Source of the DNA: Dimorphilus gyrociliatus
Taxonomy: Eukaryota > Animalia > Annelida
Reading direction: 5' to 3'
Length of the DNA: 64,000 bases
Assembly: GCA_904063045.1 (NCBI GenBank)
Contig: CAJFCJ010000006.1
Span: 5,224,408-5,288,407 of the forward strand
Shown here piece after piece: positions 22,120 to 29,143 of the stretch. The notes beneath the pieces are model-generated. The model was not told the origin of the DNA. It saw only the letters and a program-made list of their open reading frames with translations, and did not search any database. Made by a program: the position numbers and the translations under genes. How positions within the stretch are numbered: position 1 is the stretch's first letter; each line of letters opens with the position of its first letter.

Positions 22120-23959
22120 TCATTCCAAATCTGATCTAGGATTAAGTTTTACGTAGAGTCCATTCATTGCTTTACTTACAATTGAGAATTTATACACTGA
22201 CGGCTTTTCCGGATCAGTTTCTAATCTGAACCTGAAAAGTTAAGAGATAGTGGATGATTAAGAGAAAATATATTAATTATTATATTTACTTTCTTAAAAC
22301 TTTCGATATTACTATTTTCAATTCATTCATTGCGAAATTCTGACCTATACAGTTTCTTGGTCCAGCGGAGAAAGCAACAAAGCTGAATGGATCTTTTTTC
22401 TTGGTATTTTCTAGTAAAAACCTATCAGGATCAAATTCTAAAGGATTTTCCCAAACTGTAGTATTATTGTGTATTTCATAGATATGTATAGACACAGGAG
22501 AATTGTGAGGGACTTCCACCCCAGTTATATCTAAAGAGCCATCGATACGCCGTTGTATGACAGGTACTGGAGGTACCCTACGCAAAGATTCCTTAATGCA
22601 CCTTGTAAGATATTCCATTTTAGTTAGGTCTGACCAAACAATATCATCGTCGTCTTTGTCGGTAAATATCTTATCAATCTCTGCTCTGCATTTTTCTTGA
22701 ATTTCCGGATACTGAGCCAATTGATATAGAGTCCACGATAAAGCGCTGGATGTTGTATCATGACCCGCGAATAAAAATGTATCAACTTCAGCTCTAATTT
22801 CCTTATCGGTTAGGCCAGTGCCACTGTCATCTCTAGCCAACAGGAGAATGTCCAATAAGTCTTTATATTTTCTCGTTGATGGAGTATTAGTTTTCAAAGC
22901 TTGTCTTCTTACTCTTACAATATCGTCAGTGATACCATGAACATAATTGCATAATGAGCGAAATTTAAACCCAGATGGTGATAGGTTAAATATAAAATCA
23001 CTATAAAGAAACGGATTGCTGAAAATAAAAACCACTAGATATTTTTGTCTGATAATTGAAATGAAAGGAAACTTTAATATATACAGTGCTCTATTCATCC
23101 ATAGATCTTGTAATTTAATGACAGCTTCTAAATAGGGATGTTTCTCGCTACATGGAAAACATAATCAATTTAAATTACTAATTTGCCTTTATCACAAACC
23201 CGAGCTCTTGTACAGGTGTTTCGTATGACATAGTAGTTCTTAGCATAATATCTAAGCTTAACATGCTTAGGGCTGAAAATATTTCAAAGCTCTCATGCGA
23301 ATTTTTTGACATTTTGCTCTGGTTTAATAAAAACACAGAATGAATCATTTAATAGGTAATTTTTACCGTATGGCTTACTAATAGTTTATCGACAGCCTCA
23401 TTTTTAACTTTAAGATAGCTCTTTAATATATCATAATGAAATGCTGGAGTGAGCAATTTTCTATTTCTCTTCCAAATATCACCTCCTGAATTTAATAGAC
23501 CATTACCCAACCAGGGTTCGCCCATTCGATAAACTCCATTGCAAAGCATAGATTTAGGATTAGCCGTATTAAATAAAACCTTTGCCGTTTCGGGATGGGA
23601 TAAAATTAATTCTGGACAAAATACTGACATCCACTCTTGTCTCCATTTCGGGTATTTGTGTACTTTTTCCCTATACCTTTTCAATACTCTCTCGTCTAGC
23701 TCATCAGGCCACTTTGAATAGAGAGAGAAATGAAAATTTAAAATTATAGAACGTTCTCAAATATGGTAATATTCTTTTATACCTCTCGTAATTGTCCAAA
23801 AAGCCAATGACCTCTATTTCCAGGTATTTGTTTAAGCGTTTTTCTTAGGCGTTTGGTGTAACAGTAAATTTCGAAAAAGTCATACATCACGATGACAAAC
23901 GGTGAAGCAGCGCAGGCAAAAGCCGCTAATATTGAGTAATGAATTAAAGATAGTTTCAT
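22120..23959 (-). CDS. Cytochrome P450, CYP4 clan (4 exons)
   Basis: N-terminal membrane anchor; WKRNRKLLTPAFH, DLLDILL, I-helix EVDTFLFAGHDTT, K-helix KESLR, FDPDRF and the heme motif FSAGPRNCIG. Confidence 0.93.
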
Positions 23960-24228
23960 CGTAACTTGTCAGCTAGTCATAGCATTTCAGGACTTAATAT
24001 AACAGTCCTCTAGCAGACATGTTTATATTGCATAAAAGAGGTCACCACCGTCATTTTTACTCATTGATAAGAATTTATAACGTATTATATAGTTAATATA
24101 TAACGATTTCGTCGTAGCAAATGTATTTCGAAAAGTACTAATTCATAAATAAGTAATTAGGAATATAAATGATAAAAAAAAATGACTTTATAGTTTTTAA
24201 AAGTACATTCAATAAATCCATTAATTTT

Positions 24229-26190
24229 TTATTTGGTTCTTGTTAGTTTACAAAAGTATACGGGGCCGAAATTAGCAGACGGATAAGGTAATACTAATTG
24301 TCCGTATTTACAAGTTTTATGAAACCAGAAATACTTTCCAAATTTAGTGACTAATCGACTTAAATCATGAATCATGAACTCCAGGTCAGTTTCAAGAAAT
24401 TGTTGTAAAGTGGCTTGAATAACGCCATCATTTTGAGCTTGAGATAATGTGGTAGTAGTGTATACTAATGATCCGCCAACTTTTAGCATCTTTAGGGAAA
24501 GACTGAAAAGAAAATGAATAGAAAAATAAAATAGTCTAATTGGTTAATTAATTAATTAATTAATTAAAACAATATTATACAGTAGTGTTTCAAAAATGTT
24601 GTTGAATTATTCATACGATATAGCTATTTGTACAAACAATAAAGATTCGAATTTCGAGTACATTTGTAAAATTTCAAGTTAAGTTCAGTAAACTGTCAGA
24701 ACTAAAGACTAGGAAAAGATACCACCTGTCTATTTAATGTGTAATAATTAAAATGGTAAAGATAGATATAGGCAGATAGATTGATAGATATAGACAGCTA
24801 AAAACCAAAAAAAAGCATATATATGTTGAAACTTACCATAGCATTTCGGATTGTATTTCAGTTAACTCCAGTCTTTCGGACTGCTTTACGCCCGTAAACA
24901 TATTCATATTAGGACTTGTTACAGAAAGTCTATCACTATTACAAGGTACGTCAAGAAGTATCTGTTTTTATAGAAATCACAAGTTCTTTTTCTCAATAAT
25001 CGTCTTATATGATTAAAAGTTTGTACATACTTTATCAAAGTGTATATTATTTCGATATCTATCATAAAATCTGAATAAATCTACATGATGAGTTGAAATT
25101 TTATCTTTATAATTTGATAAAAAGAATTGAAACGATGAACGCAAATTTCTCATGTTTAAGTACGATCTATCAACACTATGTATCTGCTCTATAGTCAATA
25201 GAAAATATAATTATCTAATTAATATATATTAATTAAAATAAACCTGGCATTAGTGATTGTAACATAATCATTGATTTACCACCGCTACCGCAACAGAAAT
25301 CTCCAACAACTTCTTCGGGCTGTAGGTCCAATGCGAATACTGGTAATAAGGCTCCACCATCGATTAAAATATAATCTAAAAGTATTTTAGATATTTAATA
25401 ATTATGTTTTCATTTATTAGTAAAATTGTTTTATACCTAAATATCCGTTAGAGCTCTTTGTCGGTGGTTCGAACATTGTTGGTACTCCTTTTTCGAATGA
25501 AAATGCGTTAATAAACTTTGGCAGTTCTTCATTTGAAAAGATTATTTGAACTTCTGACTGATCTCCTTGAAATGTATTCTTTGCCATTTCTTCTTCTTCT
25601 AGAGATTCTCTTTCGGATAATACTCTTGTTGTTGGCATAAATTGTTGTAGATTAAGAGAATCATCCTGACCAAATCTTTTTACTTCATCCTCTTCGGCTA
25701 TTGGCTCAAATGTATCTTGAACTTGTTTGTCTTCATTTAAACTCAATGTAGGGCTACCAATTTTTCCGTAATAACTGTTTTTCTCTTCTCTTGCAAGTTG
25801 CGTAAAGTCGACTGACCCTAATTCCCATAATTTGTCTATAGTTGCTGACGGGTTACCAAAATTATTAACGAGAGCACACTGCTTTGGTTGAGACAATAGC
25901 CCAACTCTTAATGTTGGCCACAATTCATTAAAGTCTTTTGAATAGTATACATCAAAGTGTCTTAAAGCTTTTTCAATTACAGTTTGCTGAGGATTCGTCC
26001 TGGCCTATAAAGAAATTCCTATTTTATCACTCAGAGATTTTACAATTTATGCCACTCACGTAATTTGTTTTAAATCTATAACGTTTAAAGAAGAGAGATA
26101 TTTTTTTAGTTGACTGTCTAGTTTGATTATAAAATAAAGATGTATTCATATTAACAAATGATCAAAGGCACGTGTTTGATAACGCAACAT
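24229..26190 (-). CDS. NSUN4: NSUN4-type mitochondrial rRNA m5C methyltransferase homologue (motif VI Cys absent)
   Basis: KALRHFDVYYSKDFNELWPTLRVGLLSQPKQCALVNNF, YYILIDGGALLPVFALDLQP, motif IV ILLDVPCNSDR, GGSLVYTTTTLSQAQNDGV and the C-terminal NFGPVYFCKL. Proposed start MLRYQTRAF (26190), with a 16-nt exon at 26075-26060. Confidence 0.9.
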
Positions 26191-26935
26191 TCGACGAAAA
26201 ACTGGTAAACTTTTCGCGCGCTTTCAAAATAAAAGAAACATTTGTGTTTTATTATCAAATATATATAAAGTAATAGTCTGTAAATTCAAAATCTAATTTA
26301 CCTGTATAAATTGACCAAAGAAATACAGAGTTTTGTTGATAGTAAGAGTGTTTGCTCTAAAACTAAAATAATCAATAATGTGTGCAAGCCAACGCTTTTT
26401 TCCTTGACCTTGATATTACTTGACTCACGTGGGTTTATGCGTTGATATCCTCTTTTCTTCAATTTCTCATATCAGAGAAGGAGACACTAGGAATTTCTTA
26501 AGGATTTCAATCAAGTATTACCCCAAGGTAAGTTTATTGTTAATAGAGTAGGCTTTTATTTTCGCTTAATTGAGTAAATTAAGTAAAAATTATTATTAGC
26601 CAGCAGTGTTCAGCCAAACCTGCATCATTGCAGTGTATCTACTGTAATGTAAATCGTAGGAGACTAAAAATAGATCTTTAGGTCTATATTGCCAGCAACA
26701 GTATATAACGTTTTGGCAATTATCTGTCGTTCAGACGGAAACAGACAGGAGATCAGGTAATTCCGAAAAATGAACATTTTTTAAAAAGATATTTAGTGAT
26801 TAGGTGGTTAAAAAACGTGTTTTTAAATGAATTCTTATTTGATATTAGAGTTTTTTTTATACACCTTAAATTTGATTTTAAATCACAATTTTTATCAAAT
26901 TAAATGATAATTTCTACAGATAACAAGAAGTAAAA

Positions 26936-29143
26936 ATGATAAAGAAAGTATTAAGTGTTCTTTGGGGAGCCATCGAAGTTTTTGTCTACGGTGGTATAAC
27001 TTTCGGATGGGCCTCATTGGTTTTTGTATTAAAGAAGGAAGGATTCTACGCAAATGTCTGCGACAGTTACAATTCAACAAATGTAAATTCAACAGTAGTA
27101 GAATGTGCAGAACAAAATTCAAAAATGATTTTAATAATGACTATATTTTTGGCGGTTGGTGGAATAAGTACATTCTTTACAGGTTACTTTTACGATAAGT
27201 TTGGTCTAGCATATTCAAGATTATTAGGAGGAGCTCTTTACGTAACTTCCTTACTTTGCTTGGCTTTAATTACTGCAAAACAACAATGGATGCTATTTCC
27301 AGCAACAATTTTATTGAATAGCGCTGGTTTTTTGACATTAACAACAAACATGCCTTTAAGTAACCTAATACCAAGGGCGAGATCAACTATAATCACCTTA
27401 TATAACGGTTTCTTCGCAGGAGCCATTATGATTTTCGAATTAGTTAAAATGGCATACGAGGTATATAGTTTCTTACATAGAATAATCTCTAATACTTTCT
27501 ATCTATCTAATATATTTAAATGTAGAAAAAAAACTACTATTCCTGATCATTTAGATTTTCTACTTAATGTCTTTTTAGTTTAGAGAACAAATGAATTATT
27601 TATAGAGAATATCTCATAACAAATTATTTGATTATATATTAATGTCGTACTTCGATTACAAACCATTAATCATAGTAAAATAGCACATATGGCTAGATAG
27701 TAGATATATACCTTTTTGTTAGTTTTTCGTCTTTAATCTAAAAGAGGAGTAGATAGAGAATAAAAAAGAGACAATATACAATATTATACTAATTTAAAAA
27801 TATCAATTGATCTAGAATCTTTTCTGGTTTTTAAGTTACATAAAAAAAACACTACACTTAATTTGAAGAGTCTATTAAACATTGGAATACGAAATAAAGG
27901 TACAAAGGATGAAAAAACTTGTATAAAAAAGAAATTTTATATAAATTCTAATAGAGAGATATTTTTTCTATAAAAGAAACTATATTTAGGGTGGAATAAG
28001 TCTTCAAATTTCTCTATCTATTTTGGCACTCGGTCAATTAATATGTCTTGGATTTACTATATTCATTCTTCCGAGAAAAAATGTACCGTGGCCGTTACCT
28101 AAAAATTATGAAATTGCAACGCTTTTAAATAAATTCTGTAGAAAGGAAAAGTATGTTGTTAAAGAAGAGAAAGAAGAAAAAACATTTATTGATGATGAAC
28201 AAAATAAAATTGAAACAGTTAATAACCCACCAAAAATGACCTTCGTTCAGTGCCTTTTGACACCTCAATTTCTATTACATCTTGCGTTCATGTGCGTTAT
28301 ACAATTACGTTTGAGTTTTTACTTGGCAACGTTAAATCCATGGTTGTCGGAATTGACAGGAAATGATCCAAAGTTGATCAGCTTGTATACTAATATATTC
28401 TCCTATATACAATTAGCTAGTATTGCCTATTCACCATTTGGAGGATTGATAGTTGACAAATTTAAAGCTGATTTAAGAGTTTTGGGAATCTTATTACTGG
28501 TGGCAAATATTTTTGGATTAATAATAGCAATACCAGGAATGGTACGGTCTCTTCCTCTTCAAATTTTAGGATTTATATGCTTAATGGGATTTAGAGGATG
28601 GGCATACGCTTTCAATCCTACAGTTGTTGCTCTAATGTAAGTACCTCTATACAAAATTAGTTGTACCTTTATATACGCTAAACCTTTTATGTTATATTTA
28701 GATATCCAGGCGAACATTTTGGAAAATTATTTGGAGTTATTTTAATGGTTATATCTGTGTTTGGATTAATGCAATTTCCTTTGTTTAAACTGCTTCATGG
28801 ACCATTTAATGGAAATATGCAATATGTAATAAAACATGTTTCTAAAGATATATTTTTACCCTTATTATCATTCTAAAAATGGATTTATTTCTAATATAAT
28901 TAATATATTCCCATGCAGGTTCAGTTAATATTCATAGGACTTCATTTATTGACGATGGCTTCACCAATTTATATGATTGTCAAAGAGCATATAAAGAGAA
29001 GTAAATAATCTTTATTATCAAATATTTCTAATATTTTCATTTATACATTTATGTTTATCTAAATAGAAAACGAAACCAACAAACCAGTAACATTAAATTT
29101 ACAAGAAAATGGAGATAATGAAAAACAAACCCCTCCTCTATAG
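26936..29143 (+). CDS. SLC43-family MFS transporter (SLC43A3-like; 5 coding exons)
   Basis: IEVFVYGGITFGWASLVFVLKKEGFY, G.FYDKFGLAYSRLLG, SNLIPRARSTIITLYNGFFAG, RLSFYLATLNPWL, YSPFGGLIVD and YPGEHFGKLFG; about 12 hydrophobic segments. Confidence 0.88.

What the first reader, a model, noticed from the sequence alone, without database searches (positions are those of the whole stretch)
24442..24462. NSUN4 orthologue has lost the catalytic nucleophile cysteine (motif VI)
Seen: VYTTTTLS in place of the conserved VYSTCSLS. The Cys position is ACC (24453-24451), two changes from a Cys codon. Motif IV DVPC and the rest of the gene are intact. Known: in NSUN/RsmB enzymes the motif-VI Cys attacks cytosine C6 and is essential; NSUN4 both methylates 12S rRNA and, with MTERF4, acts as a structural mt-LSU assembly factor. 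Inference: this lineage kept the assembly role but lost m5C in mitochondrial small-subunit rRNA.
Basis: partly seen in the sequence, partly recalled or inferred. Interest (0 to 1): 0.72.

Follow-up and report, generated by a model that had tools for sequence, protein, structure and literature searches.

The report
Naturally dead NSUN4 kept by selection
This small worm genome has one expressed copy of the mitochondrial RNA methyltransferase NSUN4 that lacks the cysteine needed for catalysis yet is still under strong selection, so the protein is probably kept as a ribosome-assembly scaffold rather than as an enzyme.

Summary
A six-exon minus-strand gene (26149..24229, 448 codons) is the only NSUN4 orthologue in this 77.9 Mb genome. 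Its motif VI reads VYTTTTLS. Thr (ACC, 24453-24451) sits where human NSUN4 has the nucleophile Cys310.

Transcript contigs from two studies reproduce all five introns and every exonic base, so this is neither an assembly error nor RNA editing.

A second species (81% identical in exon 6, same neighbouring genes) also has Thr there (ACA). Ours versus that species gives dN/dS of about 0.09 with synonymous sites saturated. The loss is therefore old and the gene is still under selection.

Nine of 57 columns that are at least 90% conserved in active NSUN4s deviate, all in the catalytic core. They include motif I (CCGSGGK for CAAPGGK) and the invariant Ser162. The N- and C-terminal conserved residues are all kept, and so is DVPC.

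MTERF4 and METTL15 orthologues are present. No second NSUN4 or NSUN3 was found.

NSUN4s without this Cys also occur in spider mites, a false spider mite, a thrips and unnamed eukaryotes. In those, both catalytic cysteines are gone.

Loss of mitochondrial m5C itself is inferred, not shown. I class this as a new variant of a known kind, of moderate interest.

The parts
26060..26149 (-). Exon 1 (30 codons, ATG at 26149). It is a basic, presequence-like N-terminus. An in-frame TGA lies upstream at 26164-26162.
   Evidence: Sequence. The exon 1-exon 2 junction (laid as 26003|26059, cut +1, i.e. exon 2 starting at 26004 and exon 1 ending at 26060) is seen in transcript contigs of X2, X4 and X5. The relative has a homologous exon, 53% identical.
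25437..26004 (-). Exon 2: the NSUN4-specific N-terminal domain plus an acidic, low-conservation insert.
   Evidence: Its only significant PDB matches (E<=1e-10) are NSUN4 chains, E 5e-12; one GH95 chain scores E 0.37. All 9 conserved columns of this region are kept. Junctions.
25244..25375 (-). Exon 3: start of the methyltransferase core, carrying motif I.
   Evidence: Matches human NSUN4 residues 155-194, E 7e-7. Pfam PF01189 positions 2-28.
25275..25301 (-). Motif I (SAM loop), DFCCGSGGK, in place of the consensus DxCAAPGGK. The Pro that is 100% conserved in active NSUN4s is Ser here.
   Evidence: The relative reads DFCSGAGGK.
25350..25352 (-). Ala at the position of human Ser162. That Ser is 100% conserved in active NSUN4s and is changed in every Cys-less lineage examined.
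25031..25188 (-). Exon 4: the most divergent part of the core, corresponding to the motif II/III region.
   Evidence: No significant PDB match on its own. It is placed by collinearity, by the splice junctions and by 65% identity to the relative. Three conserved columns are changed, including a 100% conserved Arg that is Asn here.
24837..24961 (-). Exon 5, carrying motif IV.
   Evidence: Aligns to human NSUN4 residues 252-291. 85% identical to the relative.
24941..24952 (-). Motif IV, DVPC: the release (PC) cysteine is retained.
   Evidence: It is also retained in the relative. It is lost (PS) in all other full-length Cys-less NSUN4s.
24229..24502 (-). Exon 6: motif VI and the NSUN4-specific C-terminus (stop codon at 24231-24229).
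   Evidence: Matches human NSUN4 residues 298-382, E 1.4e-14. Representatives search. All C-terminal conserved residues are kept.
24442..24465 (-). Motif VI, VYTTTTLS, in place of VYSTC[ST]LS.
24451..24453 (-). ACC (Thr) at the position of the nucleophile cysteine (human Cys310).
   Evidence: The relative has ACA (Thr) at the same codon.

Best explanation
This is the single NSUN4 orthologue of a miniature spiralian worm. The assembly statistics fit the annelid Dimorphilus gyrociliatus, but that identification is an inference. The protein has become a pseudo-methyltransferase. The motif-VI cysteine that must attack C6 of the target cytosine is Thr. The SAM loop (motif I) and several other invariant core residues are also changed, so the protein most likely cannot make m5C. 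The change happened before this species split from a related species, at a distance where synonymous sites are saturated. Since then the whole protein has stayed under strong purifying selection, including the NSUN4-specific N- and C-terminal parts and the fold of the dead catalytic domain. The inferred retained function is the catalysis-independent one known from mammals. There, NSUN4 pairs with MTERF4 (an orthologue is present here) and sits on the late mitochondrial large-subunit intermediate, on the P loop/h80-h81, while MTERF4 holds h68-h71, which controls maturation and subunit joining. The inferred consequence is that the decoding-centre m5C of the mitochondrial small-subunit rRNA is absent in this lineage, along with any NSUN4-dependent mt-tRNA m5C. 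Shown here: gene model, expression, the substitution, its age, single-copy status, purifying selection and presence of MTERF4. Inferred: loss of activity, MTERF4 binding, the role in assembly and loss of the modification.
For: Gene and substitution. RNA-level confirmation of all introns with zero mismatches, in two studies. Single copy: exon 6 and exon 2 queries at E<=10 hit only this locus. An NSUN4 profile hits only this locus strongly, plus the NOP2-, NSUN2-, NSUN5- and NSUN6-like loci weakly. PF01189 at E<=10 adds only a GSTCD-like gene. All four paralogues keep YSTC. The Cys column is Cys in 178 of 188 homologues. The annelids Capitella and Owenia keep it. The related species has VYTSTTLS, DFCSGAGGK and DVPC, with the same exon structure and the same flanking P450 and MFS genes. 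Selection: dN 0.166, dS about 1.8, omega about 0.09. Ours deviates at 9 of 57 conserved columns (median for active orthologues is 1), all in exons 3-6. The relative shares all nine. The two species differ at only 3 of the 57 columns, all formerly catalytic. An MTERF4 orthologue is present as an intact 327-aa ORF. Literature: the TC-Cys is the nucleophile, and the subunit-joining role does not need catalysis (PMC6409601). On the mtLSU the NSUN4 active site is more than 15 A from any RNA base (bioRxiv 10.1101/2021.03.17.435767). NSUN4-MTERF4 is still recruited without mitochondrial SAM (PMC12198368). C. elegans carrying a TC-Cys-to-Ala nsun-4 allele is viable (PMC7957426). Independent Cys-less NSUN4s in mites and thrips show that the scaffold can outlive the chemistry.
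Against: No modification data exist for this animal, and the mitochondrial genome is not in the assembly; only a frameshifted COX1 NUMT was found. The target cytosine could therefore not even be inspected. Motif IV DVPC, the GGK of motif I and the motif II Asp are still conserved in both species. That could mean some ligand or RNA binding in the pocket is still used. Binding to MTERF4 was not tested, because the joined protein could not be submitted. The dS estimate is saturated and the genome is AT-rich, so omega is only approximate. NSUN2 or another enzyme could in principle methylate the 12S site.
Confidence: 0.72

Rival explanations
1. The protein is dead as a methyltransferase but is retained for a different or additional non-catalytic job. 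One possibility is binding the small-subunit decoding-centre RNA, or mt-tRNA-Met, as a chaperone or reader that uses the still-conserved motif IV pocket, rather than (or as well as) the MTERF4-dependent large-subunit role.
For: DVPC is kept in both species although synonymous sites are saturated. All other full-length Cys-less NSUN4s have lost that Cys. The whole catalytic domain has omega of about 0.08-0.13. C. elegans NSUN-4 acts on both rRNA and tRNA-Met (PMC7957426).
Against: The only documented catalysis-independent role of NSUN4 is the one on the mtLSU with MTERF4. MTERF4 is retained here. Conservation of the fold is expected for a scaffold that docks on h80/h81.
Confidence: 0.15
2. The enzyme is still an active m5C (or other) methyltransferase and uses another nucleophile, for example the motif IV Cys in the manner of DNMT2.
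For: DVPC, the GGK of motif I and the motif II Asp are retained. DNMT-type enzymes use the motif IV Cys (PMC6409601).
Against: In NSUN enzymes the TC-Cys is required; in yeast Nop2 it is essential for function, and C. elegans was made free of RNA m5C with TC-Cys-to-Ala alleles of nsun-1, -2 and -4 plus an nsun-5 deletion (PMC7957426). Motif VI here has no Glu to play the DNMT role. The invariant Pro of the SAM loop and Ser162 are also lost, and these positions differ between the two sister species, which indicates relaxed constraint. The extra Cys in motif I is not conserved in the relative.
Confidence: 0.07
3. The finding is an artefact or a decaying pseudogene: an assembly or sequencing error at the codon, or a gene on its way out.
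For: None found.
Against: Three RNA-derived contig sets from two studies show identical sequence and correct splicing. The reading frame is intact. The same Thr is present in a second species. Omega is about 0.09.
Confidence: 0.01

Closest known systems
Mammalian NSUN4 (human or mouse; PDB 4fp9, 4fzv, 7o9k)
   Same: It matches collinearly over the NSUN4-specific N-terminus, motif I, motif IV, motif VI and the C-terminus. An MTERF4 partner gene is present. The presumed role on the mtLSU is the same.
   Different: Cys310 is Thr, Ser162 is Ala, and CAAPGGK is CCGSGGK. An Arg in exon 4 that is invariant in the active orthologues sampled here is lost. There is an acidic insert of roughly 70 residues in exon 2. 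It is therefore not expected to make the m5C841/m5C911-equivalent modification.
Engineered catalytically dead nsun-4 (TC-Cys to Ala, allele mj457) of C. elegans (PMC7957426)
   Same: The same residue is removed, and the animal is viable. It is a protostome in which NSUN4 is the only mitochondrial NSUN enzyme.
   Different: Here the change is natural, ancient and fixed in at least two species, and it is accompanied by further active-site decay.
Cys-less NSUN4 orthologues of Panonychus citri (XP_053213904.1), Brevipalpus obovatus (XP_074597754.1) and Frankliniella fusca (KAK3910943.1)
   Same: These are annotated NSUN4 orthologues that lack the motif VI Cys but keep the N- and C-terminal NSUN4 signature residues.
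   Different: They have also lost the motif IV Cys (PS). The thrips protein has lost motif I altogether. The worm lineage keeps DVPC. By taxonomy these are independent events.
Other methyltransferase-fold proteins reported as catalytically inactive or to have catalysis-independent roles: NSUN7 (PMC12804707), NOP2/NSUN1 (PMC9561284), METTL15 (PMC11197891)
   Same: The principle is the same: an RNA methyltransferase whose essential or retained job is structural. I took these from titles and abstracts only.
   Different: These are different proteins and complexes. As far as I saw, none is a natural lineage-specific loss of the nucleophile in an otherwise active orthologue group.

Membership tests
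NSUN4 orthologue group | NSUN4-specific N-terminal segment (human residues ~33-102) and C-terminal segment (~298-382, ending ...NFGPxYFCK) | tested here: met
   For exons 2 and 6 the only significant PDB matches are NSUN4 chains (E 5e-12 and 1.4e-14); other methyltransferase chains appear only at E >= 0.035. All named proteins among the best representatives are annotated NSUN4. All conserved columns in these segments are kept.
NSUN4 orthologue group | RsmB/F-type Rossmann methyltransferase core (Pfam PF01189) | tested here: inconclusive
   Exon by exon only: exon 6 scores E 4.6e-4 (20.4 bits) and exon 3 scores E 0.044, both below the 27-bit whole-protein cut-off. The NSUN4 profile A1 hits four exons at E 2e-35 to 9e-8. 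The joined protein was not scanned.
NSUN4 orthologue group | Single-copy orthologue in conserved gene order, with an MTERF4 partner gene in the genome | tested here: met
   (single locus). (P450 and MFS neighbours shared with the relative). (MTERF4 orthologue, E 1.4e-16 to MTERF4 against 2.5e-4 to MTERF3).
NSUN4 orthologue group | Mitochondrial localisation | not testable with these tools
   Exon 1 is basic and lacks acidic residues, which looks like a presequence by eye. No predictor was available.
Active NSUN/RsmB RNA m5C methyltransferases | Motif VI TC-cysteine (nucleophile at C6) | tested here: not met
   Thr (ACC 24453-24451) aligns with human Cys310. Confirmed in RNA contigs.
Active NSUN/RsmB RNA m5C methyltransferases | Motif IV PC-cysteine and Asp (DxPC) | tested here: met
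   DVPC at 24952-24941.
Active NSUN/RsmB RNA m5C methyltransferases | Motif I SAM loop, DxCAAPGGK | tested here: not met
   The sequence is DFCCGSGGK. Pro is 100% conserved and Ala 90% conserved in 176 active NSUN4s, and both are changed here.
Active NSUN/RsmB RNA m5C methyltransferases | Methyl transfer to RNA | not testable with these tools
   This needs an enzyme assay or RNA bisulfite or mass-spectrometry data.

The most novel reading that the evidence does not exclude
Catalytically dead NSUN4 is a recurrent evolutionary outcome in animals, seen in this worm lineage, tetranychoid mites, thrips and unnamed marine eukaryotes. The scaffold is indispensable while the decoding-centre m5C is expendable. 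In this worm no NSUN3 was detected. If NSUN4 also served mt-tRNA-Met C34, as it does in C. elegans, its mitochondria would lack m5C/f5C34 as well. They would then have to read AUA (Met) by some other means, such as a changed tRNA, a different modification or altered codon use.
Probability: 0.3. Interest if true: 0.75.

Novelty: new variant of a known kind. Interest (0 to 1): 0.56.

Why it matters
In mammals NSUN4 has two jobs that are hard to separate: methylating the 12S decoding centre, and gating large-subunit maturation together with MTERF4. This case, with the parallel cases in mites and thrips, is a natural separation-of-function allele. The chemistry has been gone for a long time, yet the protein, its fold and its partner are kept by selection. 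That argues from evolution that the assembly role is the indispensable one and that the conserved m5C is dispensable in at least some animals. It also offers a tractable small animal for three questions: what the modification is for, what compensates for its loss, and (if NSUN3 is truly absent) how mt-tRNA-Met decodes AUA without f5C. A full-text search for NSUN4 together with "pseudoenzyme" found no paper.

Tried and rejected
1. Assembly error, RNA editing or pseudogene: rejected.

2. Alternative exon or paralogue carrying a canonical motif VI: none found. The searches were exon 6 at E<=10, exon 2 at E<=10, the NSUN4 profile, and PF01189 at E<=10. The only extra PF01189 hit, at C14:1486168, is a GSTCD-like methyltransferase ORF.

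3. Inspecting the 12S target cytosine and the mt-tRNA-Met anticodon: not possible. The only COX1 signal (G000:C26:604073-605291) is a frameshifted NUMT with no tRNA or rRNA nearby. The mitochondrial genome is not in the assembly.

4. Word search with single exons: because of the length filter it found no full-length relatives. It did find fragments from the related species.

5. The 2012 structure papers for SAM and interface contacts (PMC3458362, PMC3496059) are not held. Residue-level statements about SAM contacts therefore rest on family conservation, not on the structures.

6. Rfam scan of the gene region, including the conserved block in intron 5: nothing found. The consensus fold of that block is weak.

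7. All searches were done exon by exon. There is therefore no structure model and no MTERF4-NSUN4 complex prediction.

Full report
**Observation**

On the minus strand, 24465-24442 reads gta tac act act acc aca tta tct, which translates to VYTTTTLS. A phmmer search of the exon-6 peptide (window:24232-24501:-) against PDB sequences gives human NSUN4 as the best match (4fzv, 4fp9, 7o9k; E 1.4e-14). The alignment is ungapped: GGSLVYTTTTLSQAQNDGV against GGHVVYSTCSLSHLQNEYV. ACC at 24453-24451 therefore sits at human Cys310, the motif VI "TC" cysteine.

**Gene model**

Reading the sequence gives six exons on the minus strand:
- exon 1: 26149-26060
- exon 2: 26004-25437
- exon 3: 25375-25244
- exon 4: 25188-25031
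- exon 5: 24961-24837
- exon 6: 24502-24229

All introns are GT..AG, and the model has 448 codons. Exons 2, 3, 5 and 6 match human NSUN4 collinearly, at residues 33-102, 155-194, 252-291 and 298-382. Exon 4 is too divergent to match on its own.

**Verification with reads**

I laid contigs of four public runs on 24150-26250. One genomic run, possibly the source of the assembly, covers the stretch in one piece. Three runs behave like transcriptomes: two from the same study and one from an independent 2017 study under another organism label. In those three, contigs skip exactly the five predicted introns and show no differing letter and no indel anywhere in the exons. The Thr codon is therefore real at the RNA level. 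The gene is expressed and correctly spliced, and there is no editing.

**Copy number and paralogues**

The window lies in a 77.9 Mb, 349-contig genome.
- Exon 6 and exon 2 queries at E<=10 hit only this locus.
- A profile of 17 NSUN4s hits four exons of this locus strongly. It hits only four other loci, and those weakly.
- By their motifs, those four loci are NOP2-, NSUN6-, NSUN5- and NSUN2-like. All four read YSTC[ST] in motif VI.
- PF01189 at E<=10 adds only a GSTCD-like methyltransferase ORF.

There is therefore no second NSUN4 and no detectable NSUN3. The exon-wise search could still miss a very divergent gene.

**How unusual the substitution is**

An exhaustive HMMER search of cluster representatives with exon 6 returned 216 proteins at E<=1e-3. 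The named ones among those I looked up are all annotated NSUN4: molluscs, a nemertean, chelicerates, and the annelids Capitella and Owenia. In an alignment of 188 near-full-length homologues, the motif VI column is Cys in 178, and so is the motif IV column. Capitella and Owenia keep both cysteines.

**A related species shares the loss**

Word searches with exons 6 and 2 found fragments at 80% and 62% identity in Logan assemblies of three runs. Their contigs have 29% GC. They carry all six exons with the same splice positions. They also carry the same neighbours: a P450 gene downstream and an MFS gene upstream. That species reads as follows:
- Motif VI is VYTSTTLS. The Thr codon is ACA, against ACC here.
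- Motif I is DFCSGAGGK.
- Motif IV is DVPC.

Nei-Gojobori counts, taken exon by exon and then summed, give pS 0.68 (dS about 1.8, saturated), dN 0.166 and omega about 0.09. Exons 2-6 each give omega of 0.14 or less; exons 1 and 3 have fully saturated synonymous sites, so only their dN (0.30 and 0.13) is informative. The Cys-to-Thr change therefore predates a deep split, and the gene has been under purifying selection since.

**Pattern of decay**

I took the 57 alignment columns that are at least 90% conserved among 176 orthologues retaining both cysteines.
- The worm protein deviates at nine of them. The median for active orthologues is 1 and the 95th percentile is 7.
- All nine lie in exons 3-6. 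In human numbering they are Ser162 to Ala, Ala183 to Gly, Pro184 to Ser, Ser308 to Thr and Cys310 to Thr, plus an Asn and two Arg in exon 4 and an Arg to Lys in exon 5.
- All conserved columns of the N-terminal domain and of the C-terminal tail are kept.
- The relative shares all nine deviations.
- Across the 57 columns the two species differ at only three. All three are formerly invariant catalytic-core positions: Pro184 (Ser versus Ala), the exon 4 Arg (Asn versus Ser) and Thr309 (Thr versus Ser).

This is the signature of relaxed constraint on the chemistry with maintained constraint on the fold and its surfaces.

**Partner and context**

An intact 327-aa single-exon MTERF4 orthologue is present (G000:C2:3697657-3698346). 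Its E-value is 1.4e-16 to MTERF4 chains against 2.5e-4 to MTERF3. An MTERF3 orthologue and a METTL15 (RsmH-family) gene are also present.

The mitochondrial genome is not in the assembly. The only COX1 signal is a frameshifted NUMT. The 12S target site and tRNA-Met could therefore not be examined.

**Mechanism**

Four points come from the literature:
- In NSUN enzymes the motif VI Cys attacks C6 and the motif IV Cys releases the product. The review reports that the motif VI Cys is essential for function in yeast Nop2. The same review states that the NSUN4-MTERF4 role in subunit joining does not need catalysis (PMC6409601).
- On the human mtLSU intermediate, NSUN4 sits on the P loop/h80-h81 with its active site more than 15 A from any base, while MTERF4 holds h68-h70 (bioRxiv 10.1101/2021.03.17.435767).
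- Recruitment of NSUN4-MTERF4 persists without mitochondrial SAM (PMC12198368).
- C. elegans with TC-Cys-to-Ala nsun-4 is viable, and its NSUN-4 methylates both mt-rRNA and mt-tRNA-Met C34 (PMC7957426).

From this I infer a dead enzyme retained as the MTERF4-partnered large-subunit assembly factor, with loss of the 12S m5C. Retention of DVPC in both species leaves room for residual use of the pocket (rival 1). A DNMT-like use of that Cys as nucleophile is unlikely (rival 2).

**Wider pattern**

Among the representatives, the motif VI Cys is also absent in the following:
- Panonychus citri: YTTNT
- Brevipalpus obovatus: YSTKS
- Frankliniella fusca: YCTET
- an unnamed eukaryote present in Tara Oceans metagenomes: YTTQT
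- several fragments: YSTST, YTTST, YC[VA][QK]T and FCSRT

Every full-length one has also lost the motif IV Cys (PS). The thrips protein has no motif I. All keep the NSUN4 terminal signatures. By taxonomy, with Cys-retaining relatives in each group, these are independent events. In the worm lineage only the nucleophile Cys is gone. That is the harmless order of loss, because a PC-Cys mutant with an intact TC-Cys traps RNA covalently.

**Identity of the organism**

The best matches are spiralian. The figures of 349 contigs and 77.9 Mb fit the published Dimorphilus gyrociliatus assembly (about 350 scaffolds; genome size given as 73.8 Mb; PMC7854359 and its preprint). This is an inference from statistics, not a label.

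**Limits**

- The omega estimate uses a simple counting method on saturated, AT-biased synonymous sites.
- Absence of NSUN3 rests on exon-wise searches.

**Verdict**

The finding is a new, naturally occurring variant of a known protein whose non-catalytic role was already known. It is of moderate interest as a single case, and of more interest as part of a recurrent pattern.

Noticed in passing
window 24624-24730 (inside intron 5 of NSUN4): A block of about 105 nt is roughly 85% identical to the same intron of the related species, although synonymous sites between the two are saturated. It has no Rfam match, only a weak consensus fold, and no coverage in the RNA contigs. It may be a regulatory element or a small RNA.
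   Followed up: partly
window 24612-24644: A 33-nt stretch in intron 5 also matches, with 2 mismatches, a different and more deeply covered contig in every run laid, including the RNA-like ones. This is probably a short shared sequence with another expressed locus.
   Followed up: no
window 26222 to about 26304: The transcript contig of run X4 leaves the genome at 26222 and continues with sequence found near 26304. This implies a 5'UTR intron of about 80 nt and a further upstream non-coding exon. About 766 nt more lie on that contig, towards the head-to-head MFS gene at 26936-27583.
   Followed up: no
P0151 (Panonychus citri), P0097 (Brevipalpus obovatus), P0085 (Frankliniella fusca), P0141/P0152 (Tara Oceans eukaryote, L029/L030), P0090, and fragments P0021, P0034 (L020), P0088, P0095, P0137: Other NSUN4 homologues lack the motif VI cysteine. 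All the full-length ones also lack the motif IV cysteine, and the thrips protein lacks motif I. This looks like recurrent pseudo-enzyme evolution, and a full-text search for NSUN4 together with 'pseudoenzyme' found no paper.
   Followed up: partly
G000:C26:604073-605291 (L015-L017, L021): A nearly full-length COX1 copy with frameshifts lies inside an 866 kb nuclear contig, with no tRNA or rRNA nearby. It is a NUMT. The mitochondrial genome itself seems to be absent from the assembly.
   Followed up: partly
whole genome G000: The NSUN repertoire detected is NOP2-like (C18:~800k), NSUN6-like (C2:~2017k), NSUN5-like (C5:~1626k), NSUN2-like (C11:~351k) and the dead NSUN4. No NSUN3- or NSUN7-like locus was detected.
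   Followed up: partly
window 22286-23959 (minus strand) and 26936-27583 (plus strand); L023, L025: A CYP4-like P450 gene downstream of NSUN4 and an MFS transporter gene upstream of it are in the same order and orientation in the related species. Micro-synteny is thus conserved despite saturated synonymous divergence.
   Followed up: no
window 25438-26004 (exon 2, residues ~75-170): An acidic, poorly conserved insert lies between the NSUN4 N-terminal domain and the methyltransferase core. It is absent from human NSUN4. Inserts at this place occur in many invertebrate orthologues, which are 440-520 aa long.
   Followed up: no
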